Shown here in pieces: positions 2,061 to 63,770 of a stretch of 64,000 nucleotides of DNA (position 1 is its first letter; every line of letters starts with the position of its first letter). The stretch is from Macrostomum hystrix. Taxonomy: Eukaryota > Animalia > Platyhelminthes. The DNA is taken from positions 1,116,001 through 1,180,000 of the forward strand of contig CATNEN010000011.1 of NCBI GenBank assembly GCA_950097015.1. Reading direction: 5' to 3'. The notes beneath the pieces were generated by a model that worked only from the letters and a program-made list of their open reading frames with translations, did not search any database and was not told the origin of the DNA. The translations under genes were made by a program, and so were the position numbers.

Positions 2061-2164
2061 ACGGGATTCTAACAGATCACACGTCAGCATGTGAGACAGG
2101 ATTCCAACAAGCGACAAGCGCAATCATCGAATTAATCATAAACAATCAAAAAACGAATTTTTAG

Positions 2165-5100
2165 ATTTTACTGGGACCTGTTAATGCTGATTCTGCTCAT
2201 CACCAACCTGGTTGTCCTGCCAGTGGCGATTTCATTTTTCAACGACGACCTCAGCTCGCATTGGATAATTTTCAATTGCGTTTCGGACACCATCTTTCTG
2301 AGCGACATTGCTGTCAATTTTAGAACAGGTTTGCTAATTGGTTGTCTTTTAAATATACCCACTATTTTATTTTTCCAGTATCTCTGACAGACTAATAGAA
2401 GCTTCCCTTAACTTTCCTCAGGTGTCATCACAAACGACTTTGCCGACGAAATCATCCTAGACCCGAAGCTAATCGCGCAACACTACCTGAAGTCCTGGTT
2501 TTTTCTAGACCTGGTCTCCTCCATTCCAATGGACTATATTTTCCTGGCACTCAATCAGCGAAATAACGTCAGCCAGTTGGTTCACGCTGGTAAAGGGCTT
2601 AATTTTCTAAAATAATACTTGCACAGAAATTAAAAGTGTTTCATTGCGAATGAAAAATTTCCATCAGGTCGCGCGCTGCGTATTCTTCGCCTAGCCAAAC
2701 TGCTCAGCCTGTTGAGGCTGCTGAGACTGTCGCGATTGGTCCGCTACGTCAGCCAATGGGAAGAGGTGAGGTGGCTTTTATGAGTTTGTTTTGTTAGGAA
2801 AATGATATCTATGTTTATTTATCTACTTAATTATGAGAAAAAAGGGAAATTTTTTTTGAGACTATTTTGTTATGTCTTATTTTCACAGAACAAATTTTGA
2901 AAATATTTGAATTCGCGCTAAAAAGCTAATTAGTAAAACAAAACAAATAATTATTAACAAACGAACTCTGATGCATGACGAAAAAAAAATTGACTTAGAA
3001 AATGTAACATAGTACATTTTGAAAAAAAAATTATTCAGCTTTCTCTAAACATATTTGCTTTATCATTTCGCGCGAATTCAAATTTTAAGCTTTTGATTTA
3101 AATGTAGATGCTATTTTCTGCTTTGAATTCCGCGTTTGATTTACAACATTTGGCAGTCCAAATCGATATAGTGCAGATCGTTCTAAGCCGCCATCCATTC
3201 GCGCACAAGGTTTCCAGGAATTAGAAACCGTTTAAACCGAAATTAATATAATATTATTTTTTCAGTTCTTGCAAGTAGCCACAAAGTGTCTCGGCATAGT
3301 CAAGCTGATTCTCATCATGCTACTCCTTGGCCACTGGAATGCCTGCTTCCAATTCTTGGTGCCCTTTCTCAACGACTTCCCGTCCGATTCCTGGGTGACC
3401 AAGGAAGGCCTGAAGGTGAAATATACAGTCTTTTTAAGTAAAAATTGGTCCAACAGGTTTGCCGTGATGTCGAATTGAACTAATTATTTTAATTCATATC
3501 GGAAAGTTACTATTAAAATATTATTCTGCACGCTTGCTTTAGTGAGTGAGTTCAGAAATCTTTTGTGAGCCCGTTTGCGTTTTTTACAAGTTTCTTATAA
3601 GACATGAAATTTAATTCATCCGTGTAAGTCACTTTTTGTGTCTGCATTAATAAAAATCGGTACTAAACCTTTGACGTAATTTTTGGAATAATTAGATATT
3701 GTTAAAGTAGTTAATGATTTTTAGCTGTACATAGTATCTAATCAAAGTGAAACACTTCTAAAATATTCGCTAACCTAACTTGGACTAAACTTAAGACATC
3801 AATTAAATTTAAAAGGTAGAAACCTTGTATAGCAGGCAGAAACACTTTTCTAATAGGTAGACACCCCTGTCTAAAAGGTGGACACCCTTGTCTGAAAGGT
3901 GGACACCCTTGTCTAACAGGTAGACACCCTTGTCTAACAGGTAGACACCCTCATCTAAAATGTAGATACCCTAATCTAACAGGTAGACACCCTTGTATAG
4001 CAGGTAGCACCCTCATCTAACAGGTAGACAACCTCATCTAGAAGGTAGACACCCTTGTATAGCAGGTAGCACCCTCATCTAACAGGTAGACAACCTCATC
4101 TAGAAGGTAGACACCCTTGTATAGCAGGTAGACACCCTCATCTAACAGGTAGACAGCCCCATCTAAAATGTAGATACCCTAATCTAACAGGTAGACACCC
4201 TTGTATAGCAGGTAGACACCCTCATCTAACAGGTAGCACCCTCATCTAACAGGTAGACACCCTCATCTAACAGGTAGACACCCTCATCTAAAAGGTAGAC
4301 ACCCTCATCTAACAGGTAGACACCCTCATCTAAAAGGTAGACACCCTCATCTAACAGGTAGACACCCTTGTATAGCCGGTAGACACCCTCATCTAACAGG
4401 TAGCATCCTCATCTAACAGGTAGACACCCTCATCTAACAGGTAGACACCCTCATCTAAAAGGTAGACACCCTCATCTAACAGGTAGACACCCTCATCTAA
4501 AAGGTAGACACCCTCATCTAACAGGTAGACACCCTTGTATAGCCGGTAGACACCCTCATCTAACAGGTAGCACCCTCATCTAACAGGTAGACAACCTCAT
4601 CTAAAAGGTAGACACCCTCATCTAACAGGTAGACACCCTCATCTAACAGGTAGACTCCCTTGTCTAACATGCAGACACCCATGTCTAACAGGTAGACACG
4701 CTTTTGTAACAGGTAGAAACCCATTTCCAACAGGGTGAAACCCATGTCAAACAGGTAGACACCTTTGTCTAACAGGTAGACACCCATGTCGAACAGGTAG
4801 AAACACCCTTGTCTAACAGGAGGATACCCTTGTCTAACAGGTTGAAATCCATGTCAAAAAGGTAGAAACACCCTTGTCTAACAGGTGGACACCTTTTTCA
4901 AACAGGTAGAAACACCCTTGTCTAACAGGTGGACACCTTTTTCAAACAGGTAGAAACACCCTTGTCTAACAGGTGGACACCCTTGTCTAACAGGTTGACA
5001 TCCATGTCAAAAAGGTAGAAACACCCTTGTCTAACAGGTGGACACCCTTGTCTAACAGGTTGACATCCATGTCAAAAAGGTAGAAACAGCCTTGTCTAAC

Positions 5101-8100
5101 AGGTGGACACCCTTGTCTAACAGGTTGACATCCATGTCAAAAAGGTAGAAACAGCCTTGTCTAACAGGTGGACACCCTTGTCTAACAGGTTGACATCCAT
5201 GTCAAAAAGGTATAAACAGCCTTGTCTAACAGGTGGACACCTTTGTCTAACAGGTATTACAAAAATGCAATAGCATCGATAATGATTGGCGCAACAACTG
5301 CAGGCATTCCCTAAATTTCAAATAACGCAAAACCGCACCTGCAGTTGCTCAACATAGCAAGCAAATTCATGGGCATATTTAACCTAGTGCTGCTAATGCT
5401 GCTGCTGGGACACTGGAACGCCTGCTTGCAGTTTCTCATACCGATGCTGCAGGACTTTCCCAGCCAGTCCTGGGTTTCAGTCTGCGGACTGAAGGTGACT
5501 GTACAGTGTCGGAGGAAATTTAAATATGCGTTAACCCGATAGATGGTGTCCGATGCTTTCCCAGAGTTAGATAGTGAAGCTACCTTATTTTAAGCATAGG
5601 ATTCTTTATTTCCGTTTTTAATATCCCTAGCAAATCGGACATTTTTAAAAATCCTATTAATTTGTTAATTCAGTTTTTTTTTCAAAACGATTTTATTATC
5701 TGTCAGATAAACTAATTTAATAAGCTAGGAACGCGTTTCTTTCTGCCAAAATCATCAACTTTTAATCGACACGAGAAAGCTAGCTCGTGATTAAATATTG
5801 TTACCTTTTTAACTTTAGTACATGCAGGCATTGGAAAAAAATTATCATTAGGATAAGTCACGAATTTCGAGTAGCCACTAAAAGGTTCTCATATCTTCTC
5901 TGTCTTCTATGTCTCGTGTCTCATCTCTCCCGTGTCTCATCTCTTTTGTATCTAATCTCTCACCTGTCTCATCTCTCCCGTGTCTCATCTCTCCCGTGTC
6001 TCACCTCTCCCGTGTATCATCTCTCCCGTGTCTTATCTCTCCCGTGTCTCACCTCTCCCGTGTATCATCTCTCCCGTGTCTCATCCCTGCCGTGTCTCAC
6101 CTGTCCCGTGTCTTATCTGTCCCGTGTCTCATCTCTCCCGTGTCTCATCTCTCCCGTGTCTCATCTCTCCCGTGTCTCATCTCTCCCGTGTCTCATCTCT
6201 CCCGTGTCTCATCTCTCCCGTGTCTCATCTCTCCCGTGTATCATCTCTCCCGTGTCTCATCTCTCCCGTGTCTCATCTCTCCCGTGTCTCATCTCTCCCG
6301 TGTCTCATCTCTCCCGTGTCTCATCTCTCCCGTGTCTCATCTCTCCCGTGTCTCATCTCTCCCGTGTCTCATCTCTCCCGTGTCTCATCTCTCCCGTGTA
6401 TCATCTCTCCCGTGTCTCATCTGTACCGTGTCTCATCTCTCCCGCGCCTAATCCTCCTCTTACGTAGTAACTTTCGCAATCATGACATTGTAACTTTCTC
6501 GTGTCGATCGCAACAAACATAATTGAAACACCTCGCAGCATGGACAATGTTAAGGCAGTTTTCTAGGCGTTAAACGAAATGAAACATTCAACAATACATA
6601 ATTCTGCGCTTTTTCTATTGCTAAATGCCACACTGCAATGCACATCAAAATCAATAACACAAACGCACCGAATGTGAAAAAAGACAGTCTACTAAAAATA
6701 GTTGGGATAATAACAAAGCAGCAACGCAGATTAATTAACTAACTGACACCCATTTCAGCTGTTAAATGTAGCTTCCGTGTTCATTCGTGTTGTAAACCTG
6801 GTCTGCCTCATGCTGCTGCTGGCACATTGGAATGGCTGCTTGCAATTCCTTGTGCCAGCTATTCAGGACTTTCCTAAGGATTCGTGGGTTAGGAAACTCA
6901 ATATTCAGGTACAGCAAAGTGAAGTCCGCTTTTTTCAATCAATTCTGCTTTCAGTTTGTTTTGAAGACATTTTAGTGCTTAAATATAGTTTAGGTTTTAA
7001 TTTAGTTTCCAGTTCGCTTTGAATTGCTTGGAACAATGTCAAAGATAAGTCGTATATTATAATAAACCAGAAGAGGATTCAAAAGTGTTAGACAGGATTC
7101 TAAGGTGTTAGACAGGATTCTAAGGTGTTAGACAGGATTCTAAGGTGTTAGACAGGATTCTAAGGTGTTAGACACGATACTAACATGTTAGACAGGATTC
7201 TAACGTGTTAGACAGGGTTCTAAGGTGTTAGACACGATACTAACGTGTTGGACAGGATTCTAAGGTGTTAGACAGGATTCTAAGGTGTTGGACAGGAATC
7301 TAAGGTGTTAGACAGGATACTTTTTATGAGATTGCTGTCACTAATTTAATTTATTTCCTCTATAAATGATTATACAAGCGAATTTCTATTTACTGAATCC
7401 TAATACAAGCACAATGCGCGTTGGTTAGATTCATGATTTTTTAGCTTTTCAGTTTAAGCGTGGCAGGTATGGCGAATTGCTAAAAAATTGGAAATTTTCA
7501 CAGTCAGGTAGAGAATGTGAGAGAGCAGAGAATGATGAGGTCCGACTTTAGGGCTGAGAAAGATTGTTATATTGAGAAGATTAGAAACGTGAATTAATGA
7601 TGCTGTTTTTCACTTTTAATTGAAATCTTAGACCTACAAATGCTTATTGAATGCTTAGCGCGTCAAAAAATTTCCCCTAATTATTAGAAAATAGAATTTC
7701 CATCTTTCAAGCACTTATAATTGACACGATTTACAGACAGCACTGCGCGTAATTTACTGTCTTGCGCAAAAAGCTTGTTTTTTAACCGTTGTGACCATGC
7801 ACTCGCTTTGAATATTTTTTCTTTGTTTTTTAGTACACATTACCAAAAGTCTATAATTTTACTGATCTAATCGATTCAAAGAATATAGAAAATTTAACTA
7901 GAACGACGTTGGCAAGAAACACGATTGTTTAGATTGTAATAAACGGAGGACTTTTGTAATTTTCAAAATTATTATTAAAAAATTAAATCCAACACGAAAC
8001 ACGCAGGACGCTCACTGGTTTCGTCAGTACACGTGGGCTCTGTTCAAGGCCATGAGTCATATGCTGAGCATAGGCTATGGCCAGCATCCGCCAACTAGCA

Positions 8101-11100
8101 TTAGCGAGGCCTGGATCACCATTGTCAGCATGATGACCGGCTCCTCCTGCTACGCCCTGTTTGTTGGACACGCTGCCGCCCTGATTCAAAGCTTCGACAC
8201 TTCAAAACGACTGTATCGAGAGAAGGTGAGACTCAGTACGGTGTGGGTTCAGTGCGGTGGATGTCCTGGTGTGGCATGTGTTCAGAGCGTTGGATGTCCT
8301 GGTGTGGCATGTGTTCAGAGCGGTGTATGTCCTGGTGTGGTTTGTGTTCAGTGTGGTGGATATCCTAGTGTGGTTCATGTTCAGTGCGGTGGATGTCATG
8401 GTGTGGTTCATGTTCAGTGCGGTGTATGTCCTGGTGTGGTTTGTGTTCAGTGCGGTGGATGTCATGGTGTGGTTCATGTTCAGTGCGGTGTATGTCCTGG
8501 TGTGGTTTGTGTTCAGTGCGGTGTATGTCCTGGTGTGGTTTGTGTTCAGAGCGGTGTATGTCCTGGTGTGGTTTGTGTTCAGTGCGGTGTATGTCCTAGT
8601 GTGGTTCATGTTCAGTGCGGTGTATGTCCTGGTGTGGTTTGTGTTCAGTGCGGTGTATGTCCTGGTGTGGTTTGTGTTCAGTGCGGTGGATGTCCTCCTG
8701 GTGTGGTTTGTGTTCAGAGCGGTGTATGTCCTGGTACGGTTTGTGTTCAGTGCGGTGTATGTCCTAGTGTGGTTCATGTTCAGTGCGGTGTAAGTCCTGG
8801 TGTGGTTTGTGTTCAGTGCGGTGTATGTCCTGGTGCGGTTTGTGTTCAGTGCGGTGTATGTCCTGGTGTGGTTTGTGTTCAGTGCGGTGGATGTCCTCCT
8901 GGTGTGGTTTGTGTTCAGAGCGGTGTATGTCCTGGTGCGGTTTGTGTTCAGTGCGGTGTATGTCCTAGTGTGGTTCATGTTCAGTGCGGTGTATGTCCTG
9001 GTGTGGTTTGTGTTCAGAGCGGTGTATGTCCTGGTGCGGTTTGTGTTCAGTGCGGTGTATGTCCTAGTGTGGTTCATGTTCAGTGCGGTGTATGTCCTGG
9101 TGTGGTTTGTGTTCAGTGCGGTGTATGTCCTGGTGCGGTTTGTGTTCAGTGCGGTGTATGTCCTCCTGGTGTGGTTTGTGTTCAGTGAGGTGTATGTCCT
9201 GGTGTGGTTTGTGTTCAGTGCGGTGGATGTCCTCCTGGTGTGGTTTGTGTTCAGAGCGGTGTATGTCCTGGTGCGGTTTGTGTTCAGAGCGGTGTATGTC
9301 CTGGTGCGGTTTGTGTTCAGTGCGGTGTATGTCCTAGTGTGGTTCATGTTCAGTGCGGTGTATGTCCTGGTGTGGTTTGTGTTCAGAGCGGTGTATGTCC
9401 TGGTGCGGTTTGTGTTCAGTGCGGTGTATGTCCTAGTGTGGTTCATGTTCAGTGCGGTGTATGTCCTGGTGTGGTTTGTGTTCAGTGCGGTGTATGTCCT
9501 GGTGCGGTTTGTGTTCAGTGCGGTGTATGTCCTCCTGGTGTGGTTTGTGTTCAGTGCGGTGTATGTCCTGGTGTGGTTTGTGTTCAGTGCGGTGGATGTC
9601 CTCCTGGTGTGGTTTGTGTTCAGAGCGGTGTATGTCCTGGTGCGGTTTGTGTTCAGAGCGGTGTATGTCCTGGTGCGGTTTGTGTTCAGTGCGGTGTATG
9701 TCCTAGTGTGGTTCATGTTCAGTGCGGTGTATGTCCTGGTGCGGTTTGTGTTCAGTGCGGTGTATGTCCTAGTGTGGTTCATGTTCAGTGCGGTGTATGT
9801 CCTGGTGCGGTTTGTGTTCAGTGCGGTGTATGTCCTGGTGTGGTTTGTGTTCAGTGCGGTGGATGTCCTCCTGGTGTGGTTTGTGTTCAGAGCGGTGTAT
9901 GTCCTGGTGCGGTTTGTGTTCAGAGCGGTGTATGTCCTGGTGCGGTTTGTGTTCAGTGCGGTGTATGTCCTAGTGTGGTTCATGTTCAGTGCGGTGTATG
10001 TCCTGGTGCGGTTTGTGTTCAGTGCGGTGTATGTCCTGGTGTGGTTCATGTTCAGTGCTGTATGCACACATTTTGTGTACATCGGCCTTGACTTTTTAAT
10101 TTTTTGTAAATGTAAATTCTCACCGTGTCTTTGGGGTTGGCTCTCATTCGGCTGAAGTACATGACAAGCCTCCAAATCAAATTGAGGCCGCATGTGAATT
10201 CTAACTCAGGAAATTTTGAAGCGAGAAGCTGAAGCTTTGCTGATGCACCTGTCGCTTTGTGTTATGTGAGGTGTTCTTGTGGGTATCGTAGGACTATGAT
10301 TGTCATAGTAGATAATTGGAGGAGGTATTGTATCATTCAGTAATCAGTCACCTAAAGCGTTAGAAATTTGTGATTTATAATTAAGGATGGAGCACACACT
10401 AGTTTGTGATTAATCAGTGCCTAACAATTGGGTCACCTTCTGAATAAAGGTGGTTAATTAAGCCGTGGGAACGGAAATTAAAGCCGTTAGGATTGCTGGA
10501 GATCAAAAGACGCCTGTCTTTCACAAATTTTCATTTAAAAATATTTGTTTTAATTAGCACCATGGAAGTAACGTTTAATTTAAATTTCGCGCGCAGTTTA
10601 AACAGGTGGAGGAGTACATGGCCTACAGGAAGCTGCCCAGAGCTTTGCGTCAGAGAATCGCCAACTATTATGAGCACCGGTATCAGGGCAAGATGTTCAA
10701 CGAGAATGACATCCTTAGCGAGCTGTCCGAGTGTCTCAGAGAGGTTGGTGCAACTTGTGCAACATGATAAACATCACGGACGATAAATATCACATATGAT
10801 AAACATCACACATGATAAAAATCACAGATAATAAGCAACAAAGATAGAAAACATCACACATGATAAACATCACACATGATAAACATCACAGATAATAAGC
10901 ATATCACAAATAATAAAAATCACAGATAATAAACAACACAAATAGTAAAAATCACAGATAACAAACATAACAGATGATAAATATCCCAGATAACAAACAT
11001 AACAGATGATAAACATCCCAGATAATAAACATCACAGATGATAAACATCACACTTGATAAACATCACAGATAATAAACATCACACATGATAAACATCACA

Positions 11101-13429
11101 GATAATAAACATCACAGAATATATACTCCAGAACGATAAACTTAATATAATGACGCAGTAGACTTTTGAAAACGAAATTGCCAACCCTTCGTCAGCAAAT
11201 CATCAACTACAACTGTCGAGCGCTGGTCGCGGCAGTACCATTCTTTACCTACGCCGATCAGGACTTTGTCTCTGAGGTGGTCACCAAACTAAAATACGAA
11301 GTGTTCCAGCCAGGCGATCTGATCATCAAGGAGGGCACAATTGGCACTAAGATGTACTTCATTCAGGAGGGCATTGTGGACATCATTACTAAAGACGGAG
11401 AGGTGGCGACCAGCCTGTCTGATGGATCCTATTTTGGAGGTATTTTTTTATGTTTTCTTGCAAATCTGATCGATGAGTTCATATTATTACAACTGGTAGA
11501 ATGACGGGGGAGAAATTAAGTGGGAGAGATAAGGATACAAGGATAAGGAGACGGAGATGAGATGAGAGATAAGGGAAGAGAGATATGGGAGAGAGATAAG
11601 TATTTAAATGGGAAAGAAATAAAGGGAAAGAGTTAATGGGAAGAGATAAGGGGAGAGAGATAATGGGAAGAGATAAGGGGAAAGAGAGATAAGGGTAGAG
11701 TGGTGAAGATCATAGGAGACATTTCTAAAGATTAAAATATAAATTTTGAGTAAGTTTTTTTTGTCTCCATTCACAACTCCATGTAGCTTTTTCACAAAAA
11801 GTCCCCACAGAGTACAATTCGCAGTTAACAGGCCTGAGAAAAATATCAATACTTTCGTCCACAATTGTGTTTCTGCTATTTCATCGGTCACGTTTGACCT
11901 CAGATTTTGGGACGTGACGCGAGACAATTAAAACTAATAAATTAATGATCATAATAGGTCCCCCAGAAGTGAACAATAAAAGTGTGTGAGTGAATTCACC
12001 AACAAATACCATTCACTTCTAGATTGATTAGAAAATTCGCATCGTATCGTTTGATCAGAAATTATACTCGCAGACGAAATCCCATTCTACAAAATCCCTA
12101 ACTCGACGAAAGACATCTTTTTCGGCAAAATCTCATTTATTTACAAAATCCCGTTTTGCGAAATCATTTTTTAACGAAAAATCCCATTGTTTGCAAAAAT
12201 CCTATTTTTTACAGAATCCTACTTTTACAGAATCCCATTTCTTACAAATTCGTTTTTTACAAAATCCTGTTTTTACTAAATTACTTTTTTTACAAAATCC
12301 CATTAACAAAAATCCCATATTTCGACGCAATTTCCTTGAAATCCCAACTCAATCCCAATCTCTCCATGCAGAGATCTGCCTGCTCACGAACGCCAGGCGT
12401 GTGGCCAGCGTACGCGCTGAGACCTACTGCAACCTGTACTCCCTGGAGCGCGAGAACTTCCTATCTGTGCTGGACAATTATCCCCTGATGCGTCGCACAA
12501 TGGAATCGGTGGCAGCCGAGAGGCTGAGCAAGATCGGGCAGAACCCGCAGCTGGTCAGCAACCGAGCTGATCTCAAGGAGGACCTGAACCTGGTCAAGGA
12601 GATTGTCGATCAGGCCGCGGCGGCGGCCGCCGAAGAGGCCGATGGCACCAGCGACAGCAGCGACGACGGCGACGGAGGCCATTCGGCGTCGTCCTCACAG
12701 AATCGTCGGGCCCGGACGCCGACTCAACAGCAACTGACTCCGTCCTGGGAGTCAACGGGAGGCACAGAGCGACGAAAATCGGTGGTTCGACTCGGACTGG
12801 AGAAGCTCGGCATCGCCAGGTGATCTTGAGGGATTCGGAATGTCTTTATCAACTTCTGTGCTGTTTTACTTGATTAAGTTTTCAAACTGGTGCCAAAATG
12901 AGATCAGTGACTCATCTCTCCCGTGTCTCATCTCTCCCGTGTCTCACCTCTCCCGTGTCTCATCTCTCCCGCGTCTCATCTCTCCCGTGTCTTATCTCTC
13001 CCGTGTCTCATCTCTTCCGTGTCTCATCTCTCCCGTGTCTCATCTCTCCCGCGTCTCATCTCTCCCGTGTCTCATCTCTCCCGTGTATCATCTCTCCCGT
13101 GTCTCACCTCTCCCGTGTCTCACCTCTCCCGTGTCTCATCTCTCCCGCGTCTCATCTCTCCCGTGTCTCATCTCTCCCGTGTCTCATCTCTTCCGTGTCT
13201 CATCTCTCCCGTGTCTCATCTCTCCCGTGTCTCATCTCTCCTGTGTCTCATCTTTTCCGTGTCTCATCTCTCCCGCGTCTTATCTCTCCCGTGTCTCATC
13301 TCTCACGTGTCTCACCTCTTCCTTGTCTCATCTCTCCCGTGAATAATAACGAATAATAATGACACGTACCGGTCCCGAAATTTTGATAGGACCAGACTAA
13401 GCGGTCGCCGTCGGCATCATCATCATCAT

Positions 13430-18056: not shown

Positions 18057-21000
18057 TCACAGGTTGAACAGGTTTGTCTCAAGCAACGAGCACAGGCAAG
18101 CCTCCCGTTGACTAGAACGGCAGCCAAAAATGCAGTCTGGACAGCCTGGTTGGCTGATCGAAACCGAAATGCTGAACTCCGGCATGCAGGCCAGTCGGCT
18201 TTCGTTGCTAGGCTGAAATTTCGCATGGCAACGGCACTCGTAGCTTCCCCACATATTCAGGCACTCACCGTTTGGACGGCAGAGATTAGGATCTTCGATA
18301 CATTCGTTGCGATCTGGGAATGAGTAAATTATTAATGATATAATTTATTTGATTTAGCCTCCATTGGCATGAAATTGTTACTATTGAAGCCACTCACCGC
18401 GGCACAGCTTTGTTCTGGAGTCAAGAATGAATCCTGGGCGACAACGGCAAGTGTACGAGCCCACCGTGTTCACGCAATCGCCCATCAGGCACAGATCCTT
18501 GCCAATCAGAGTACATTCGTCAATATCTTCAAGTGGAGCAAAATAAATTTAACGCGTGCATTTTAGCATCGCAAGCATCGCAATCATAGTTTTTTAAATC
18601 GTCCCGAACGTTTTTCGAAAAAATCCTCACCAATGCAGCTCTTCCCATCGGCGCTCCGCTTGAAGCCGATGAAGCAGGCGCACTCAAAATCTCGACCTTT
18701 CTCAACACAGCGGCCGTGCTGACACGGTCCCTCGGCGCCATCAATGCTGAGGGTCTCGCATGCGCCCCCACCGCCACCCAAACTCGCATACTGACCGTCC
18801 ACATCTCGACGACTAGACGGACCGCCAGACTTCAGCACCGTGATGCTGCCTTCAATGCTGTATTCAAAAGCCGACTTGTCCGGACTGCCTAGCATTGCAT
18901 AGGAGCCGCCGCTGCCGCTGCTGCTGCCGCTGCCGGAGCTGCTGCCGCTGTTGTAGACGCTGCCGCCGCCACCGCCGCCAAGGCCGTGAATGATGACCTT
19001 GTTAGTGTCTGTTGAATGCGGCAGGAGATGCAGCGGAGTGGTACTTTGTGAGCCAACAGTGAGAGCATACACTGCCCAACGATGAGAAAATTAAGACACT
19101 CGTGTTTGAGTGTGCACATTCGTTAGTATTACTGTACGTGTTTATGAACTGGACAGCGGCTATGAGCGACTACAAGGGATTGTAGCCAAGTAGTTAGAGA
19201 GTCGGACCCACGACTTGAAGGTCGGGTTTTCGATTCCCGACTCCATGGAAAAATTTGTGTCATTTAGCAAGACACTTAACTCTGCATTGTTTTAGTTCAC
19301 CCAGCTGTTAAATGGGTACCAGCATCAGCTGGGGTAATTGAGGGTCAGTGTGGTGTTTCCCCAGTCCATGGACTAAACAGCCGTACACAGCCTTCAGAAG
19401 CGCCGCGCACATATGGCCCAATTGGGGCAGGTGTAATCAATTATTATTATTATGTAGGTGTGGTACGTCACCGACCTGCATTGTAGTCATACGGCTGGCA
19501 GCGACGTCCCAGCGAGTCGACATTCTTGAATCCCGGATAGCAGAAGCACTTATAGAGTCCGGTGGCGGGCGAGTTCACGCAGTGGCCCGTGCCGCCGCAG
19601 ACTCCTGGGTGCTGGGCGCAGTATCCAGTCTCGCGCCTGCTGGCCCTCAAGCAGAAGCGCTTGTCGAACGACTGTCGATAGCCGGCGGCGCAAGAGCAGG
19701 TGAACTGGTGAGAACCGTTCTCATCAAGACATCGACCCGCGCCGCACACGTACGCAAACTTCTGGCAGTAGGTCTTGTGAAACAGGCGCTGAAGCGGGTT
19801 GTATGGAGCCGGGAATCTGGTTGGCACAACGCCAGTCTCCGGGGCGCCCACTGGCCGACACGAGCGTCGATCTGTCGACAGCTGGTAGCCGGAGTTACAG
19901 GTGCAGCTGAAAGATGTTTGACTGCCCCGATCAACGCAGACACCGTTGGGGCCGCATGCATCAGGATTGCGTCCGCAATAGGCTGCAGGTGGCGTCGAAG
20001 GGCGGCAATTCTGCTGGTCCCCGGTCAGTTCAAAGCCGTGGTAGCACATGCATTGAAACCGGCCAGAGCCAAGGTTCAGGCAGGCACCGTTGCGGCAGAT
20101 ATCGAAAATTTGGCAGGGACTGGTGTCTGCAAATTTGACGCATGGATTTAGATTCAAGGTTGATCAACCTTTATCGGTCGATTATATATTATTTTCACTA
20201 GATTTTTGCTTTCTCCATTCTTTAACTAATTTATGACACCTTCTCTAATAGGACCAGATGTCTAGCTGACAGCGCAGCTATTGATCGGCACATCTGAAGG
20301 CTGCGTACGGCTGTTCAGTCCATGGACTGGGGGGACGCCACACCCACCCTCAATTATCCCAGATAATGCTGGTACCCATTTAACAGCTGGGTGAACTGAA
20401 GCAATGCAGAGTCAAATGTCTAGCTAAAGGACACAAATTGTTCCAGTGGAGTCGGGAATCGAACCCCCAACCTTCAAGTTGTAAGTCCGAGGACCTAAAA
20501 GATAGGCTACAAACTCTTTGGTAGATACTTTGATCAGTGTTAAATTTAATGTATTAAGACGTTAGGCTTACGACTTATATTTGTATTAGAATTTTTTGAT
20601 ATTTTACGAGTAAAATAGATTTTATGCAAGTAAAAAATGTGCTATCCCCAAAGTGTATTTCTTTACGAAAACCGGCCTCCGTCCGTGTACTCCTATAGTG
20701 GTCCCTTTTAGTACATTTTTTTAGAATCAAGAGTAGCCGAAAAAAGATTACGAAATTCTGTGTGGTTACTAAAAGCAATCGACAATTTATGCCTCTAACC
20801 TACCAGCGTCCATTCGTTTTCTTTGGCACGATTTCATATCTTCAGCCGGACTGTACCCAGTTGCACAAGCGCAATAATAATCTGTGGTCGACAAGCTGAC
20901 ACACCGGCCGTACGGCTGACACGTTAAAGACCGCCTGTAGCTGTCGCTGTCGCAGTAGGGCGTCGGCGACGTGGTCGGAGGTGGCGGCGGCGGTTGCGGG

Positions 21001-22537
21001 GCGTCACCCAGGTGAGCGGGCAAGCAGGACCGGCCGTCTGCGGAGGGCTTGTGGTCCGCGTTGCGGCACAAGCAGATGTAGGTGTCGTCGCTGGGTCCAG
21101 TTCCGACAGCGATGCATTCGCCGATGTCGTTTGGGCAGGTGCGCTGTCGTGTGCAGGCGTCCCCAATCGGGAGAGTCGTCGTAGGCGGCGGCGGCGCGGT
21201 TGTTGGTTGAACAACCGGCAGGCAGTCCAGACCGTCTGGGCTAACGCGGTAGCCGCGGTGGCAGCTGCAGTAGTAATTGCGATCGCCGAATGGCACGCAG
21301 ACACCGCCGGGGCTGCAGGCTCGTGGGTTCGACTTGCAGTAGGTCTGGGGCCGTTGAAGGACGCAGCTCCGACCATCTGTTGCCAAATCGTAGCCGGTGT
21401 AACAGTGACAGCGATAGTCTGGAGTGCCCGCGCTGCTGACTGTGCTAATGCAGCTGCCGTGACTGCAGAGACCGCTGCGGCTGCTGCAGAGGTCCGTGAC
21501 CCGCTCTGCGGATTCATGATTAAAAAAGACCGTCATTGTTAGGAACCACGAAGCTAATTTAAGACAGTCCTCGAGCAACTCGCTCTATTTAATCTCGACG
21601 ATGCTGATATCGGACGGCTTTGAAAGTTATGGTGGATTTTGACGAAGTGGGTTGTGGGTATTTATATATATGGGGATTACCTAGTTTTAGAGTACATAAC
21701 CAATTTACCTGAACAATTTCTTCCATCCCAACTCAGATCGTATCCGGGGAAGCAGCTACAGTGGAACCTGTCCGGGCCTTCGCTAACGCAGGTGCCACCA
21801 ACACCGCAGATGCCAACATGGGCGTCGCAATAACCTGAAGTTTTCGGAGTTAAATAGGGCTTGGGGTGAAGCCTAACAAGCTTATTCAGGTAAGGTTAAA
21901 TTTGATTTCAGAAATTATGATATGATTTTAATTCAACCTACAAAACATCTTTCAATGTTGTCCACATCAATAGCTGCAATGGTACAAGGAAATCTACCGT
22001 ACTTTTTAGAGTTTGCTGACAATTTAGGGCTGTTCTGAAAGTATGATCTGCCAGACTTGTACAGCAGCAGCAGCAGCTTTCGCATTCTATTAGGCTTAAG
22101 TCATGTGAGACAGTTGCACATCTGCGAAAACGTTCAAGATAAAAGCAACTAATGCAGCACACAGCTATAAGTGATTCATTGCGCTGTGTTAATATAGAAA
22201 GCACCAATTATCTGGCCTGGCTGGAAGTGAAGATGGTGAAGAACTTTAGTCTGTCGGTATTTCGAGACTTCTGTTCGGATAGATAGTTCCGTAAACAGGA
22301 AAAGTACAAGTGTTTCCATGGTTACAGGCTCAGTTCTGCAACTAATTGGCTGCCGAAATTCGACCAACAAGTTAAGTTTTCCGTCTTAATTATAAGGTGT
22401 TTCAGCCTCTTAATCTCTTAATACTCGTAGATAGATAGATAGATAGATAGATAGATACATAGATAGATACATAGATAGATACATAGATAGATAGATTAGA
22501 TAGATACATAGATAGATACATAGATAGATAAATAGAT

Positions 22538-46440: not shown

Positions 46441-49400
46441 TCAGAACCTGGCGATCTCCTGCTCAGCCGCTGCCAGCTTCTCCATGCGGTCAGCCATGTA
46501 ACGCCGTCTGGCACCGATCAGGGGATTCTCCTCGCGCAGCTTGTCAAACAGCGGCTGCGGGTCGGTGACGAGAATGATGAGCGACTCGCGCAGCTTCTCA
46601 GCCATCTTGTGCAGCATGTAGTGCATGACGGTCAGGGTGACTGTGTCCTGCAGGCGCCGGACAGACACCCGGATGTAGGCCTCGGCTCCGTCTAGAACTC
46701 GACGCGTGTTACGCTCGACAATATCCTGGATGGTCATCATCGGCTGCTGCTCGTTGCTAATGCGACCCTCGCTGTCATTTCTTGTTGGATCCTCACTATG
46801 CTGCGGCAGCCGAAGCTTGTTGTTGTAAGGCCTTTTTGAAGTTTGTTGTAAAGTATAGTAAATCTTCTTTATCTATAGTATTCCGTAAGCCTGGAGTCTA
46901 GGTGCTAGACTTGTAACAATATCGACTGTAATCTCTCTTGCTGCAGGGCGTCACATTTTCACATCACATCACATGAAAAGTGGCCAAAGTTATGTTACTT
47001 ACGTATGCAAGTAGCTATCGTGCAAAATTGTTTCATAAACAGTGCTCCACTGTAATACTTTAGTCAGTTAAGCAAGCTGAGAACTCTATTACAAAGAGCT
47101 ATGACCTAGTTGTAACGTAACCTTAATTACCATATTTTTTATTTGCTTGCTGGCTTTTCTGATTGTAAACAAAAACACTCTCTCACTTCTCTTTTTCCAT
47201 CAAAAATATCCTGTCTTGCGTGAAGACGAACTCTTCCTCTGTGAAGATGTTCTTGATTTGCTCCCTGGCCAGATCGACTTGGCTCGTCCTGATGCCTTCG
47301 CACACCTCCTTGATGAACTGGTTGAAGGACGGGTAGTCGCTGAAAACAAGGTCGGCCAGGTTCCGAACCGTCTCGTCGACCTCCTGGTTGACGGAGACCA
47401 AGAAGGCACTGCAGGGCTCGCGCACCAGCTTGAGGAAGTGGTTGCGCACGAGCCGCTCGACCACCGGGTACACGTTGTCGAAGCCCGGCAGCTCGCAGCC
47501 TCTCTGCTGTTCGATGTCCTGCCTGGCGGCCTCCCACATCGCTGTCACTGAAATCATGGAATTCACGAACAGAGTGCGACTGCGCAAATGTAGCTACACT
47601 AGCTGATGTGATAAGCGCTTCGATAGCTTTCAATACTTTGGCGGGAGCAAACCTTCAGTCCTTTCGGAGAAGGCGCACATCTCGATCTCGTCGGCCAGCG
47701 TCTCCCAGTGCTTGCGGCAGCGGCCGAACAGCCTGTCTGGCTCGTGACGGTGCGTTCCCGTGGCCACGTTGGAGAAGTCCGTGGTGAACTTGTTCAGCAT
47801 CCTGGCTAGTAGGCGCTTCATCTCGTCGTCATTCTCCGGCGGTCCGGTTCCAATGCTTTCCAGCTGTTTGCACATTTCTTCTCTCTTTACCTATTTCGGG
47901 AATTTTTATGCTTAGAATAGTTAGCAAGGGCATACGTGGCTCTGTACTTTGTATCGTCTCTCGTATCACTCGTTAAGAATTCCAGCTGCTCGGGCAAGTA
48001 CAATTTCGACATTAAAAAATCACCTGAATCTCCCTCATCAGCTCGGGAATATTGTGCTTGATCGCTTCGTAAAGCTCGCTGCTCAGCTTCACTGCCAGAG
48101 TCTTTGTTCCGTACTCGAACTTATCAAGAGCTCGAAAGTGCCTGTGAGTGCGGAAGAACACTTCCTCCTCCTTGCTAGCCTGCTGCAGGCTCATGTTGTC
48201 CTTCAGCTGCTGCGCTGTGCGACACCTCACGGAGACGTAGCCCTTCTTTAACGGAATCCTCTGGTTACGCATCAGCGCCAGAACTTCCGACTCTGAGCCC
48301 GGGTTGACCAGATCCGGACAGGTGAGAACACCGATTGTCCGCTTCGACTCCGGGTCCACCTCCTTCGCTAGAGACAGAGCTTCGACAGTCTCGATGTCAA
48401 CGTGGCAGGGAATGACGACCAGAATGATGACCTCCGGTTTCTGAATGTAGCTCAGAATGAGAGACTTTGTTAGGCCAGCAACTGAGCAGCCGCCTTCGAT
48501 TGAGAATCTAAAAGTAAAGGTATCGTTTGATGTAGTATCAAAACTCTCTAATCAACTTTAATAAAAAAACTTACCTGGCTATGCCTGGCAGATCAATAAG
48601 GGTCAGGTCAGGCGAATCCGGGCTCTCAACCCACAGTTCGATGATGTGCTCAGAGATCTCTCCAGGCGAGCTGGTCATCTCATTCTGAGCCTCCCTGATG
48701 GCTGACCCGATCTCGTTCGACGCTTTAAGAGTTTTCTCCCGATCCTCACCGCTTTTAGTTTTGTATCTGCACGGGAATTTCGAGACATCAAGCTAGATCA
48801 GGGGTCGGGCCAGATGAGGCCTCGAAGTCCGGTCTGTTGCTCCTTCCGACACCTACAGTATCCTGTCTCATCTCTCCGCTGCCTTATCTCTCCAGTGTCT
48901 CATCTCTCCAGTGTCTCATCTCTCACGTGTCTCATCTCTCCAGTGTCTCATCTCTCCCGTTTCTCATCTCTCCCGTGTCTCATCTCTCCCGTGTCTCATC
49001 TCTCCCGTTTCTCATCTCTCCCGTGTCTCATCTCTCCCGTGTCTCATCTCTCCCGTTTCACAACTCTCCCGTGTCTCATCTCTCCCGTGTCTAATCTCTC
49101 CCGGGTCTCATCTCTCCCGTGTCTAATCTCTCCTGTGTCTCATCTCTACCGTGTATCATCTCTCCCGTGTCTCATCTCTCTGCTACCTCATCTCTCCTGT
49201 GTCCTGTCTCCTCATCTCTTCTCATCTCCCCCTTGTCATCTCTTCTGTCTCATCTCTCCCCGATCTCATATTTCTACAGTCAATGCGGCCTGCTGTCGTC
49301 TTTTAGACTCTCTCTTTGATAGGCTAGCTATAATAAGTTTGCCGACCCATGCGCTAGAGTTTAAATTCTACTCGAATTAGTCTGTTTGCGAGTCAAACAA

Positions 49401-50995
49401 ACAAGGCATTCGTGAAATTTATTATGAAGTCATTGAAATATGACGTTACTTGTGTTATAATGATCATTTAAATTCAATTAAGGTTTACACGTAGTTTGGT
49501 GCACTTGTGGTCAAACGAAAATATACCATCTGGAGAGATGGTGCCAATTTAATTCGAAACGTGAAAAGGCTCAGTTTTGTTCTGACCAGCTATTGCATCC
49601 GGTCATGCAGTCAACTTACAGACCCTTATCGATCAGTCACAGCTAATTGTGTTGCTACATCTACGAGTATCTGCCTGAAGATCATCGGTTGTAACTTGCT
49701 ACCACAGGTATCAGGTATATGTACAGGCATTTGCCCGCTAGATTTCTTCATCGAGTATAAAATTGCTGTTTACAAACTACTGTTCAAAGAGCTTGGCTTC
49801 GCAATCAACCTGTCTCTCCCCCCATCTCTCTCTAAAGACTTTGCACATCGCTCGATGCTGTTCGAAAACTTTTTGTAAACATTAAATTGCCAATGCGATT
49901 AAGTAAACATGTGTGTTGCTACTAAACTGTATATTTTTTCTCGATATCCTTTGCATAAATAATACTGCAAAACTGAATAAACCTGGTTAAAACTTAAAGT
50001 TAAAGCAGACAAAATTGTACAACCTATTTGACAACCAACTGAAGCACAGGGCCTCACTTGCGTCATTCAAGGTGTCTTAGGCAAAAAAGTGTCTAATTGA
50101 GGCACGAAAGTGTCTTCTAATGAGGTACGAAAGCGTCCTCTAATGAGGCACTAAAATGTCCTCTAACGAGGTACCAAAGTGTACTCTACCTTTATAAGGT
50201 ACATTGTTACAATTGTTATATTGTTACAGTTATAAGGTATTATAATGAGGCTTAGGCTAACTCTTCTAAAGTAGTCTTTTACGATCGTAATGAAGGGGCC
50301 AATAAGTATTAGAAGACGCCAGAACGGACTGAGGGAGGAGCGCTGATCACTGGATTTCGGGGTCTTGGACGCCTATACTTACGCCCTTGCAAATTTTCAC
50401 AATGCTCACGATCATAAAGGCAAAACTGAATAACTAAAAGCTTTTCTTTATATCATCGAAAGTGAATTGAACAGTTCAGGGAAAGGCGTACTTAAAATTC
50501 AACTTACTTTATCCTCGCCGACCAACCAGCATCATCCCTGCTACGCATGCTGAGCATCAGAGGGCATCGGGTGACAATGCCCGAGCCTCGGGGCAGCTCA
50601 ACGCCAGAAATGGCTTCCAAGACGGACGACTTGCCAACGGATTGGTCGCCGACAACTGCGATAGCCGGCAACCGGATGTCCTTCTGAAGGCCCTGGGCTC
50701 GAAGAAGATCAATGGCATTGAGGCAGGGCTTTAGCCGCTCTCGGAATGCTCGGCTTAGCGCGGGAGCGAATGAATCGCCCGGTTCCAAAGTGTTTTGATC
50801 GGAACGCATAGGCGACATTTTCGATTGGCTGCCATAGCCGCTGGAATTTTGACCATTTTCAAAGTCGTCGAGTTCTGACGTATTCGGTTTAGACACAAAG
50901 CTCCTACTATCGTCATCGAATGGAGGTCGCTTAGGCTGCTGCTGCTGTTGAGCAAAGGATGGCTGGCTGCCGCTTCTCTGCGGCTCGTTCGGCAT
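46441..50995 (-). CDS. MX: Mx-like dynamin-superfamily large GTPase (~733 aa)
   Basis: Exons 50995-50508, 48766-48575, 48507-48024, 47890-47637, 47579-47187 and ~46831-46441 (last acceptor least certain). Motifs [38 protein letters not shown] (G1/G2), LIDLPGI (G3), TCPD (G4), RGCELPGF (stalk) and a C-terminal GED. Confidence 0.92.
48860..49270 (+). repeat. 16-bp minisatellite in Mx intron 1
   Basis: Same unit as the HCN 16-mers. Confidence 0.92.
50090..50190 (+). repeat. Short ~23-bp tandem repeat (taatgaggcacgaaagtgtcctc-like)
   Basis: Four to five imperfect units. Confidence 0.7.
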
Positions 50996-61396: not shown

Positions 61397-63327
61397 ATGG
61401 GAGTTCCAGCTTTCTTTCGTTGGCTTAGCCGCAAATTTCCATCCATTGTTGTCCATTGCGTCGAAGAGAAACAACGCGAAGTGAATGGCGAATCGGTGCC
61501 CGTTGACACTAGCAAACCGAATCCTAATAATTACGAATTCGATAATCTCTACCTGGACATGAACGGCATCATTCATCCGTGCACTCATCCGGAGGATCGG
61601 CCGGCGCCTCGCAACGAAGCCGAAATGTTCGCCGCAATCTTTGACTACATGGATAGAATCTTTGCCATTGTCCGGCCGCGCCGGGTTCTCTACATGGCCA
61701 TCGACGGAGTGGCTCCGCGCGCCAAGATGAACCAGCAGAGGTCGCGTCGATTCCGGGCCGCTAAAGAAGCCAAAGAGAAGGCCAACGAGTTGGAACGACT
61801 CAGGGCCGACCTGACTGCTCAGGGCATGCCGCTGCCGCCGCCGAAAGCTCCTGAGGAGCATTTTGATAGCAATTGCATCACCCCGGGTACTCCGTTTATG
61901 GCTAGACTGGCTGTGGCGCTGCGCTATTATATTCACGACAGGCTGCACAATGATCCAGGATGGCGCAATCTACAGGTCTTCCTGTCTGACGCCAATGTGC
62001 CTGGTGAGAATTGATTTTATTTTCATTCTTGGTTGGGTTAAACCTAAAAGTAGAATTTTTTCTGGGGTCTATTTAGAGTCTTGTAAGGTCTTTTTAAAGT
62101 CTTCAGGACTCTCTTCAGTATCTTCAGGGGTCTCTTCAGAGTCTTCAGGGCTCTATTCAGAGTCTTCAGGACTCTATTCAGAGTCTTCAGTGCTCAATTC
62201 AGAGTCTTCAGGGCTCAATTCAGAGTCTTCAGGGCTCTATTCAGAATCTGCAGAGGTCTGTTCAGAGTCTCCTAGGGTCTATTCAGTGTCTTCAGGGCTC
62301 TATTCAGAGTCTTCAGTGCTTTATTCAGAGTTTTCAGGGCTCAATTCAGAGTCTTCAGGGCTCAATTCAGAGTCTGCAGAGGTCTGTTCAGAGTCTCCTA
62401 GGGTCTATTCAGAGTCTTCAGGGCTCTATTCAGAGTCTGCAGAGGTCTGTTCAGAGTCTCCTAGGGTCTATTCAGAGTCTTCAGGGCTCTATTCAGAGTC
62501 TTCAGTGCTTTATTCAGAGTCTTCAGGGCTTTATTCAGAGTCTTCAGGGCTCAATTCAGAGTCTTCAGGGCTCAATTCAGAGTCTTCAGGGCTCAATTCA
62601 GAGTCTTCAGGGCTCTATTCAGAGTCTGCAGAGGTCTGTTTAGAGTCTCCTAGGGTCTATTCAGAGTCTTCAGGGCTCTATTCAGAGTTTTCAGGGTTCT
62701 ACTTGGATGCTTCTAGACAGATTTTTAATCATTTATGGCTCATGGCTGCGATATTTCTGTTCTTCAATATCGAACACTCACGGTTTATTTATCAACCGCC
62801 CGTGTACTAATAAACCCTCAGGCGAGGGCGAGCATAAGATCATGGACTTCATCCGGCGTCAGCGTGCTCAGCCGGCTCACGATCCGAACACTCGGCACTG
62901 CCTGTGCGGCGCTGACGCCGACCTCATCATGCTGGGCCTGGCTACTCACGAGCCGCATTTCACCATCATTCGAGAGGAATTCGTGCCTAACAAACCCAGG
63001 CCCTGCGATCTGTGCGGCCAGCTGGGTCACGAAGCCAAGGACTGTCAGGGCCTGCCTAGGGATCAAGCTGCTGCCGAAGCTCCGCCTGTTCTAGCCTCCG
63101 AGGCTGACTTTATCTTCATCCGATTGCACATACTTCGCGAGTATCTTCAGAAGGAGCTGCGAATGGACGGCCTACCGTTCGGCTACGATTTCGAGAGGGC
63201 GCTGGACGATTGGGTGTTTATGTGCTTCTTTGTTGGCAACGACTTCCTGCCTCATCTACCTAGCTTAGAGATTCGCGAGGGAGCTATCGACCGGCTGGTT
63301 GGCATTTATAAGCGGGCTGTGTACCAG
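61397..63327 (+). CDS. XRN2: 5'-3' exoribonuclease 2 (XRN2/Rat1), 5' part; continues beyond the window
   Basis: Exons 61397-62003 ([15 protein letters not shown]...[14 protein letters not shown]...[17 protein letters not shown]) and 62822-63327 ([36 protein letters not shown] knuckle, [12 protein letters not shown]), phase 1 junction. Confidence 0.97.
62095..62700 (+). repeat. 21-bp minisatellite (ttcagagtcttcagggctcta)n in XRN2 intron 1
   Basis: Direct observation; source of the Ser-rich artefactual ORF. Confidence 0.93.
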
Positions 63328-63770
63328 GTGAGGCCGGTTTTATGTGTCTAAGGGGCTGTGTACCAGGTGAGGCCGGTTTTATGTGTCTAAGGGGCTGTGT
63401 ACCAGGTGAGGCCGGTTTTATGTGTCTAAGGGGCTGTGTACCAGGTGAGGCCGGTTTTATGTGTCTAAGGGGCTGTGTACCAGGTGAGACCAATTCTAAG
63501 TGTCTAAGGGGGCTGTGTACCAGGTGAGACCGATTCTAAGTGTCTAAGGGGGCTGTGTACCAGGTGAGACCGATTCTAAGTGTCTAAGGGGGCTGTGTAC
63601 CAGGTGAGACCGATTCTAAGTGTCTAAGGGGGCTGTGTACCAGGTGAGTTTTATTTATTGGGGGCTGTGTACCATGTGAGGCCGATTTTTTAAGTGTCTA
63701 AGCGGGCTGTGTACCAGGTGTGACTGATCTTAAATATCTGAGGGGGGCTGTAAGGACTGTACCTGGTGAG
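63313..63770 (+). repeat. 39/40-bp tandem array built from the XRN2 exon-2 end plus its 5' splice site
   Basis: gggctgtgtaccag|gtgaggccggttttatgtgtctaag repeated. Confidence 0.95.

What the first reader, a model, noticed from the sequence alone, without database searches (positions are those of the whole stretch)
3266..3304. Exons A and B replace the gating-critical S5 Arg, and exon A also the Asn
Ungapped alignment from the QWE Trp: A = [14 protein letters not shown] = [14 protein letters not shown] = [13 protein letters not shown]. Established, numbering from memory: the Arg here (spHCN R367, HCN2 R339) couples to the C-linker Asp (kept here in QSFD), and the Asn (spHCN N370) pairs with the S4 Trp (W355) to hold the gate shut. 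Exon C keeps both. B has Arg to Gly. A has Arg to Gly and Asn to Lys (codon 3302-3304). A and B gain a Lys three residues before the lost Arg. Inference: splicing could switch the channel between canonical hyperpolarization gating and leaky, shifted or altered-polarity gating.
Basis: partly seen in the sequence, partly recalled or inferred. Interest (0 to 1): 0.8.

Follow-up and report, generated by a model that had tools for sequence, protein, structure and literature searches.

The report
Swappable gate-latch exon in flatworm HCN
A free-living flatworm's pacemaker-channel (HCN) gene has three interchangeable, conserved versions of one exon, and two of them lack the arginine that holds the channel shut in mammals. 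All 35 parasitic-flatworm HCN proteins examined carry only that arginine-less version, so whether and how these channels stay closed is a directly testable question.

Summary
Window 3266-3415 (A), 5345-5494 (B) and 6759-6908 (C) are three tandem 150-nt, phase-0 exons for helix S5 of an HCN channel gene from a Macrostomum-type flatworm.

- **Residue positions.** Ungapped alignment to solved HCN1, HCN3 and HCN4 puts Gly of A and B at hHCN1 R297 (= mHCN2 R339 by my offset arithmetic, = spHCN R367). Lys of A sits at N300 (= spHCN N370). C keeps Arg and Asn. The partner Asp (QSFD) is kept.
- **RNA.** RNA-derived contigs join the S4 exon to A, to C, and directly to the pore exon. B was not seen in RNA.
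- **Selection.** All three exons recur in M. lignano under strong purifying selection (dN/dS 0.03-0.09), while the introns are unalignable.
- **New context.** The B type (Lys-x-x-Gly) is the S5 of all 35 parasitic-flatworm HCN proteins examined. It is the only S5 exon in one cestode and one fluke locus. C is the ancestral type and A is a Macrostomum offshoot of B.

Conservation of B and the Lys one helical turn earlier argue for tuned gating rather than broken gating.

The scan also noted the same exon triplet in a paralogous HCN gene elsewhere in this genome.

The parts
2160..2325 (+). HCN exon (S1-S2 region)
   Evidence: RNA contigs cover it and skip 2326-2418 with GT..AG. tblastn to flatworm HCN proteins.
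2419..2588 (+). HCN exon (S2-S3 region)
   Evidence: RNA contigs, intron 2589-2666 skipped with GT..AG. tblastn.
2667..2765 (+). S4 exon, ends ...RYVSQWEE. Its donor GT at 2766 is the branch point for the alternative exons.
   Evidence: Sequence. RNA contigs end here and continue into A, into C, or into the pore exon.
3266..3415 (+). S5 exon A: Lys 3284-3286 (at -3), Gly 3293-3295 (Arg site), Lys 3302-3304 (Asn site)
   Evidence: Joint 2765->3266 in both RNA runs, and a 153-nt contig bounded by the exon borders. Orthologous exon in M. lignano has dN/dS about 0.08. M. lignano protein P0176 uses it.
5345..5494 (+). S5 exon B: Lys 5363-5365 (at -3), Gly 5372-5374 (Arg site), Asn 5381-5383
   Evidence: Conserved in M. 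lignano with dN/dS about 0.06. Same type as all neodermatan HCN S5. No RNA junction seen (contigs show presence only).
6759..6908 (+). S5 exon C, canonical: Val 6777-6779, Arg 6786-6788, Asn 6795-6797
   Evidence: The loose end at 2765 in both RNA runs reads the start of exon C. dN/dS about 0.03. M. lignano P0137 uses it.
8007..8225 (+). Pore helix, SIGYG filter and S6 exon. QSFD at 8187-8198, with the partner Asp codon at 8196-8198.
   Evidence: The loose end at 2766 in run X2 reads its first bases, giving an in-frame form that lacks all S5 exons.
3810..5256 (+). 21-nt minisatellite in the A->B intron, partly complementary to the array at 7074-7318
   Evidence: 202 complementary seeds of 9 nt or more. 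Duplex energies -33 to -37 kcal/mol for 36-nt windows. Its role in exon choice is speculative.
7074..7318 (+). 20-nt minisatellite in the C->pore intron, complementary core GTTAGACA

Best explanation
**What it is.** A flatworm (Macrostomum-type) HCN gene encodes helix S5 in three mutually exclusive 150-nt exons, so it can make three channel subunits.
- C is the ancestral animal form. It carries the Arg that, in mammalian HCN2, salt-bridges to the Asp at the end of S6 of the neighbouring subunit and latches the gate shut. It also carries the Asn that faces the QWE motif of S4.
- B is the flatworm-wide form. The Arg is Gly, and a Lys sits one helical turn nearer the cytoplasm.
- A is a Macrostomum-specific derivative of B that also turns the Asn into Lys.

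**How it most likely works (inferred).** In B the positive charge has been relocated rather than lost. The closed-state latch would then be re-registered or weakened, not abolished. In A the new Lys could pair with the Glu of QWE.

The isoforms should therefore differ in closed-state stability: minimum open probability, voltage midpoint and cAMP leverage. Because the bridge runs between subunits, mixed tetramers could carry zero to four canonical latches.

**Shown:** the exons, the residue equivalence, use of A and C in RNA, conservation and selection, and the phylogenetic distribution.
**Inferred:** every functional consequence.
For: - Exon anatomy and splice sites.
- Ungapped equivalence to hHCN1 R297 and N300.
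- RNA junctions S4->A and S4->C. The A contig ends at a base shared with the pore exon and with the intron, but not with B or C.
- Same triplet in M. lignano loci L001 and L002 and in paralogues P0178 and P0179.
- dN/dS of 0.03-0.09 with saturated dS. Only exons are alignable between the species.
- The B type is universal in 35 neodermatan proteins. It is the sole S5 exon in Anoplocephala and Opisthorchis.
- Tree: all flatworm Gly-type exons form one clade (support 94/90). A and B group together within it (96/78). C lies outside.
- Mutational literature on the Arg and the Asn.
- The bridge is inter-subunit.
Against: - No electrophysiology exists for any flatworm HCN (one search found none).
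- Exon B was not seen in the two small RNA runs.
- Whether Lys at -3 can reach the Asp could not be measured, because the tools give no coordinates.
- Lys at -3 also co-occurs with Arg in molluscs and annelids. It may simply be ancestral rather than compensatory.
- The tree rests on 50 columns.
Confidence: 0.55

Rival explanations
1. Strong switch: A and B subunits have lost the closed-state latch. They give leaky, strongly shifted or polarity-altered channels, and splicing toggles between a true pacemaker channel (C) and a leak-like channel.
For: - R339E in HCN2 raises minimum open probability to about 43%, and R367E in spHCN gives ohmic current.
- Mutants of HCN2 Y331 and R339 gave complete constitutive conductance.
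- N370W leaves 25% conductance, and W355N/N370W reverses polarity.
- A combines both changes. That combination occurs in none of 162 S5 segments from other animals.
Against: - The Gly type is the only S5 in the parasitic-flatworm loci examined and is almost invariant across them.
- Lys at -3 accompanies Gly in all 35 flatworm proteins examined.
- The tested mutants were charge reversals or bulky swaps, not Gly plus a nearby Lys.
Confidence: 0.2
2. Compensated equivalence: the three S5 versions gate alike. They are kept for another reason, such as tissue-specific expression, assembly preference, lipid or PIP2 sensitivity, trafficking or drug sensitivity.
For: - The charge is conserved in the region: Lys7 in A and B against Arg10 in C.
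- About 20 other residues differ between the exons.
- Tandem S5 exons that both keep Arg and Asn exist in a snail and a copepod, so S5 exon duplication does not require a change at these sites.
Against: - The changes fall exactly on two of the few residues with large known gating effects.
- HCN coupling energy is small, and a loss of 1.2 kcal/mol already has a drastic effect. Exact equivalence is therefore unlikely.
Confidence: 0.2
3. A and B are decaying duplicate exons or annotation artefacts that are not used in real protein.
For: - B has no RNA junction.
- B has the weakest polypyrimidine tract of the three.
Against: - A is spliced on both sides in RNA.
- All three exons have intact frames and splice sites and dN/dS below 0.1 across saturated synonymous divergence. 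Introns are not alignable.
- The B type is the constitutive exon in Neodermata.
Confidence: 0.03

Closest known systems
Vertebrate and sea-urchin HCN channels (HCN1-4, spHCN): S5 Arg to S6 Asp closed-state latch, and S5 Asn facing the QWE motif
   Same: Exon C keeps the Arg, the Asn, QWE and the QS[FL]D Asp in the same register. The rest of the gene is 50-90% identical to HCN proteins across S1 to the CNBD.
   Different: Exons A and B put Gly at the Arg site and Lys three residues earlier, and A puts Lys at the Asn site. The S4-S5 linker is four residues shorter than in hHCN1, as in other protostome HCNs. The filter reads SIGYG, not CIGYG.
Parasitic-flatworm (Neodermata) HCN proteins, as annotated in Schistosoma, Opisthorchis, Fasciola, Echinococcus, Taenia and others
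   Same: Their S5 is the B type, [SN]KF[MI]GI[FC]N, and is 70-82% identical to window exon B.
   Different: They have a single constitutive S5 exon in the two loci examined. No canonical Arg-bearing alternative was found.
Arthropod Ih gene splicing (Drosophila DMIH, lobster PIIH). From memory and from citations only: Gisselmann 2005 and Ouyang 2007 were not readable here.
   Same: One HCN gene is diversified by alternative splicing. Tandem S5 exons are present in copepod, insect-like and snail sequences, often concatenated in gene models.
   Different: I could not verify that S5 exon choice has been described or tested there. Those tandem exons mostly keep the Arg, and the variants are Arg->Asn/Lys/Gln or Asn->Lys, not Gly plus Lys.
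Mutually exclusive exon clusters chosen by docking-site/selector RNA pairing (Dscam exon 4 and 9 layout, 14-3-3 xi; from established knowledge)
   Same: In M. lignano, one site in the intron before the pore exon is complementary to a site after exon A (19 nt, 89%) and to a site after exon B (16 nt, 94%). This is the layout with a downstream docking site.
   Different: That motif is absent from the window. Here only two partly complementary minisatellites occupy the corresponding introns. The pairing is not shown to act.

Membership tests
[quoted passage not shown] | S4 with a run of spaced basic residues ending in QWE, a GYG pore, a C-linker and a CNBD | tested here: met
   Translations. Exons align to HCN1, HCN3 and HCN4 structures at E 1e-10 to 1e-15. 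tblastn to HCN proteins across all exons. Homologues carry Pfam Ion_trans_N, Ion_trans and cNMP_binding.
HCN channel gene | Activation by hyperpolarization | not testable with these tools
   Needs electrophysiology. No flatworm HCN recording was found in the literature search.
Canonical HCN closed-state latch | Arg at the start of S5 (hHCN1 R297, HCN2 R339, spHCN R367) | tested here: not met
   Gly in exons A and B. The feature is met only by exon C.
Canonical HCN closed-state latch | Partner Asp at the end of S6 (HCN2 D443, spHCN D471) | tested here: met
   QSFD at 8187-8198 in the shared pore/S6 exon.
Canonical HCN closed-state latch | Asn one helical turn above the Arg (spHCN N370, hHCN1 N300) | tested here: not met
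   Lys in exon A (codon 3302-3304). Asn is kept in B and C.
Mutually exclusive exon cluster | Tandem homologous exons of equal length and phase, each with its own splice sites | tested here: met
   Three 150-nt phase-0 exons with AG/GT borders, 52-64% amino-acid identity to each other.
Mutually exclusive exon cluster | Exactly one of the exons in each mRNA | tested here: inconclusive
   S4->A and S4->C junctions were seen. The A contig ends on a base compatible with the pore exon or the intron but not with B or C. No B junction was seen. An in-frame form lacking all three exons also exists. These are short contigs, not full-length reads.
Mutually exclusive exon cluster | Every copy kept by selection | tested here: met
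   dN/dS of 0.03-0.09 against M. lignano. Exons are the only alignable islands.
Docking-site/selector RNA switch | One intronic site complementary to a site beside each alternative exon, conserved between species | tested here: inconclusive
   Present in M. lignano L001 and L002 for A and B. The motif is absent from the window. The window has only complementary minisatellites.

The most novel reading that the evidence does not exclude
Flatworm HCN channels with the Gly-type S5 truly lack the inter-subunit Arg-Asp latch, so they have a large standing (voltage-independent) conductance or altered polarity. On this reading the parasitic flatworms examined run on latch-less HCN only. Macrostomum uses mutually exclusive splicing to dial the number of latches per tetramer from zero to four. 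That would be a natural version of the R339 and N370 mutants used to explain why HCN channels open on hyperpolarization.
Probability: 0.2. Interest if true: 0.8.

Novelty: new variant of a known kind. Interest (0 to 1): 0.62.

Why it matters
HCN channels open on hyperpolarization because of a weak, easily disturbed coupling. The S5 Arg and Asn are among the few residues known to set it.

This gene swaps exactly those residues by exon choice, and a whole parasitic clade has fixed the Arg-less version. That supplies three ready-made, selection-tested S5 variants in one otherwise identical channel. It is a clean natural experiment on electromechanical coupling.

It also shows that 'gating-critical' R339 is not universal in working HCN genes. 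It marks a consistent difference between host and parasitic-flatworm HCN channels at a functional site.

As a practical point, several public gene models concatenate the alternative exons and need correction.

Tried and rejected
- **Missing micro-exon.** I suspected one because QWEE joins S5 four residues earlier than in hHCN1. Rejected: RNA junctions confirm the join, and all protostome HCNs retrieved show the same junction.
- **Insect origin.** This was my first guess. Rejected by tblastn and by cluster names: the gene is a flatworm gene, nearest to Macrostomum lignano.
- **Short fragments with exon B as query.** This gave only 4 hits and no spliced B fragment.
- **Ancient origin of the Gly type.** Rejected for now: the Gly-type exon of the nemertean-like locus L004 does not group with the flatworm Gly clade. 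It looks like a convergent change.
- **Docking/selector pairing in the window.** There are no unique pairs, the M. lignano motif is absent, and duplex-energy scans are dominated by minisatellites with a high background.
- **Primary papers on arthropod Ih splicing.** Not held in the library.
- **Structure prediction.** Not run, because the tool returns no coordinates. The Lys-Asp distance, which is the only useful output, could not be read.

Full report
**1. What is at the coordinates**

The + strand of window 2160-13000 carries an HCN (Ih) channel gene. The S4 exon (2667-2765) ends in ...RYVSQWEE and is followed by a GTGAGG donor.

Three homologous exons follow, each 150 nt, phase 0, and bounded by AG and GT:
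- A: 3266-3415
- B: 5345-5494
- C: 6759-6908

They encode the end of the S4-S5 linker, helix S5 and the start of the turret. The finding's span, 3266-3304, is the first 13 codons of exon A. Gly is at 3293-3295, and Lys is at 3284-3286 and 3302-3304.

The next exon (8007-8225) holds the pore helix, an SIGYG filter, S6 and QSFD.

**2. Are the positions equivalent to the gating residues?**

phmmer of each exon against all PDB chains aligns it without gaps to human HCN1, HCN3 or HCN4 over 41-45 residues. Residue 10 falls on hHCN1 R297 and residue 13 on hHCN1 N300.

By the fixed 42-residue offset between mouse HCN2 and human HCN1 (my arithmetic from established numbering), R297 is HCN2 R339.

The literature read here says the following:
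- Ramentol et al. 2020 (PMC7078272): in spHCN, R367 bridges to D471 in S6. N370 lies one helical turn above it and is faced by E356 of the QWE motif. W355 points to an S1 Phe. N370W or W355N leave 25% conductance at depolarised voltages, and the double swap reverses polarity.
- PMC11050684: HCN2 R339E has a minimum open probability of about 43% and loses 1.2 kcal/mol of coupling. spHCN R367E is likewise leaky.
- PMC9085832: the R339-D443 bridge runs between neighbouring subunits.

The only imprecision is that the modelled contact of the Asn is with the Glu of QWE, not the Trp.

**3. Are the exons used?**

The two public runs that hold this stretch are listed with unknown kind. Their contigs skip three introns with GT..AG borders and are at least 99% identical to the window, so they derive from RNA of this species.

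One search shows:
- Both runs contain the joint 2765->3266 (S4 to A).
- Both contain a contig that leaves 2765 and reads the first 28 bases of exon C.
- Run X2 also has a contig that goes from the S4 exon straight into the pore exon. This is an in-frame form without any S5 and is presumably non-functional.
- The exon-A contig is 153 nt. It runs from the AG shared by the S4 exon end and the acceptor to a single G shared by the pore exon and the intron. B starts with T and C with C, so no A-B or A-C join is indicated.

No B junction was seen.

**4. Whose gene is it, and are the exons conserved?**

The closest full-length proteins are flatworm HCNs, at 84-93% identity in the pore, C-linker and CNBD exons. 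The closest of all are from Macrostomum lignano.

- Both M. lignano loci fetched (L001, L002) have the same A, B, C order with Gly/Lys, Gly/Asn and Arg/Asn.
- Two further M. lignano paralogues show the same triplet (P0178, P0179).
- M. lignano protein P0176 uses exon A, and P0137 uses exon C.
- Models P0177-P0179 wrongly string A, B and C together.

Between the window and L001, synonymous sites are saturated (dS about 1.4-1.8). dN/dS is 0.08-0.09 for A, 0.06 for B and 0.03 for C. In a blastn of the whole cluster, only the exons align. All three exons are therefore under strong purifying selection, B included.

**5. The wider picture**

A search of 1.84 billion representative proteins with exon A, together with a region search, gave these results:
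- All 35 cestode, trematode and monogenean HCN proteins retrieved, belonging to at least two paralogue types, have the B-type S5: Lys or Arg, two residues, then Gly, with the Asn kept. It is almost invariant.
- In the cestode Anoplocephala locus (L003) and the fluke Opisthorchis locus (L005) there is one S5 exon only, of B type. No A- or C-like exon was found even with a permissive tblastn.
- Non-flatworm spiralians (brachiopod, nemerteans, leech, molluscs) have Arg and Asn. They also have the same QWEE|F.. junction, so the short S4-S5 linker is normal for protostomes.
- A C-type S5 was found in no flatworm other than Macrostomum.

A maximum-likelihood tree of 44 S5 exons (50 columns, so low resolution) gave three results:
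- All flatworm Gly-type exons fall in one clade (support 94/90), with Macrostomum A and B together inside it (96/78).
- The C exons lie outside it.
- The Gly-type exon of a nemertean-like locus (L004) falls away from the flatworm clade, so that change looks convergent.

The simplest history is this. C is ancestral. A duplicate became the Gly type early in flatworms. Macrostomum kept both and duplicated B again to give A. The parasites kept only B.

**6. Mechanism**

Shown: one gene gives at least an A subunit and a C subunit, and the B exon is selected.

Inferred: the subunits differ in how firmly the closed gate is held when S4 is up. I prefer tuning over loss for three reasons:
- The B type is the only HCN S5 of a large clade and is extremely conserved.
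- In A and B a basic residue sits three positions (one helical turn) before the Gly, while C has Val there. Each exon thus has one basic residue near the S6 Asp.
- In A the new Lys stands where the Asn faces the Glu of QWE, so a new S4-S5 salt bridge is conceivable.

There are counterpoints. Lys at -3 also co-occurs with Arg in molluscs and annelids, so it may be ancestral rather than compensatory. HCN coupling is so weak that small changes have large effects.

Because the bridge is inter-subunit, mixed tetramers could carry zero to four canonical latches.

Among 162 S5 segments from other animals, Arg/Asn is the rule (117). Arg/Lys occurs 19 times and Gly/Asn 15 times. The Gly/Lys combination of exon A never occurs.

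**7. How one exon might be chosen**

Double inclusion or complete skipping stays in frame, so nonsense-mediated decay cannot police the choice.

In M. lignano, one site in the intron before the pore exon is complementary to a site downstream of A (19 nt, 89%) and to one downstream of B (16 nt, 94%), in both loci. This is the downstream docking-site layout known from Dscam exons 4 and 9 (established knowledge).

The motif is not in the window. Here the corresponding introns hold two partly complementary minisatellites. Whether they act is unknown.

**8. Known or new**

Mutually exclusive exons in ion-channel genes are well known, and so is alternative splicing of arthropod Ih genes. I could not read the primary papers on the latter. 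I found no paper on flatworm HCN channels or on S5 exon choice in HCN.

Tandem S5 exons also occur in a copepod, in insect-like sequences, in a snail and in a nemertean-like genome, and are often mis-annotated.

I class this as a new variant of a known kind. The new element is that the swap hits the two S5 residues central to current models of reversed gating, and that the Arg-less form is fixed in parasitic flatworms.

**9. Limits**

- The scan's notes show the same triplet in a paralogous HCN gene on another piece of this genome. I did not examine that piece.

Noticed in passing
window 2765/2766 -> 8007: Run X2 has an RNA contig that joins the S4 exon directly to the pore exon and skips all three S5 exons. 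The form is in frame and would encode a channel without S5, so it is probably a splicing by-product.
   Followed up: partly
window 3109-3293 and 3204-3293: RNA contigs run from the intron upstream of exon A into exon A. This is either an unspliced precursor or retention of that intron.
   Followed up: no
window 3810-5256, 5915-6444, 7074-7318, 8240-10058, 10764-11118, 12907-13341: Nearly every intron of the HCN gene holds a long minisatellite with a 16-33 nt unit. The 16-nt unit at 5915-6444 recurs at 12907-13341, and the same peptide-like repeat appears at about 48814-49380. The arrays at 3810-5256 and 7074-7318 are partly complementary to each other.
   Followed up: partly
L001 17730-17748, 18328-18343, 20785-20803 (the same in L002): In M. 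lignano, one site in the intron before the pore exon is complementary to sites downstream of exon A and of exon B. This is a docking-site/selector-like layout.
   Followed up: partly
P0177, P0178, P0179 (M. lignano), P0215 (Bulinus truncatus), P0216 (Tigriopus californicus): These public gene models concatenate two or three alternative S5 exons into one protein, which is an annotation error. They also show that tandem S5 exons exist in a snail and a copepod.
   Followed up: partly
L004 10130-10279 and 12729-12878: A nemertean-like contig has two tandem S5 exons. The first has Gly at the Arg site and Arg at -3, and the second is canonical. By the tree this is an independent origin.
   Followed up: partly
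P0002, P0006, P0007, P0012, P0022, P0041, P0073 (insect- or arthropod-like ORFs): The second S5 exons of arthropod-like genomes carry Arg->Asn, Gln, Ala or Lys, or Asn->Lys. Variation at these two sites by exon duplication therefore seems recurrent.
   Followed up: no
window 8067-8081 and flatworm homologues: The selectivity filter reads SIGYG in flatworm HCNs, where other animals have CIGYG.
   Followed up: no
P0074: This is an HCN-like fragment of unknown origin with a flatworm-like HWNAC signature. It has Gly at the Arg site and Arg at -3, and it reads QHLQE where QWEE should be, so it lacks the S4 Trp.
   Followed up: no
window 18500-21600 (-), 50504-50995 (-), 61397-63351 (+): Other genes in the window are an EGF-repeat protein, a dynamin/Mx-like GTPase N-terminus and an XRN-type 5'-3' exoribonuclease N-terminus. 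I judged these from the ORF translations only.
   Followed up: no
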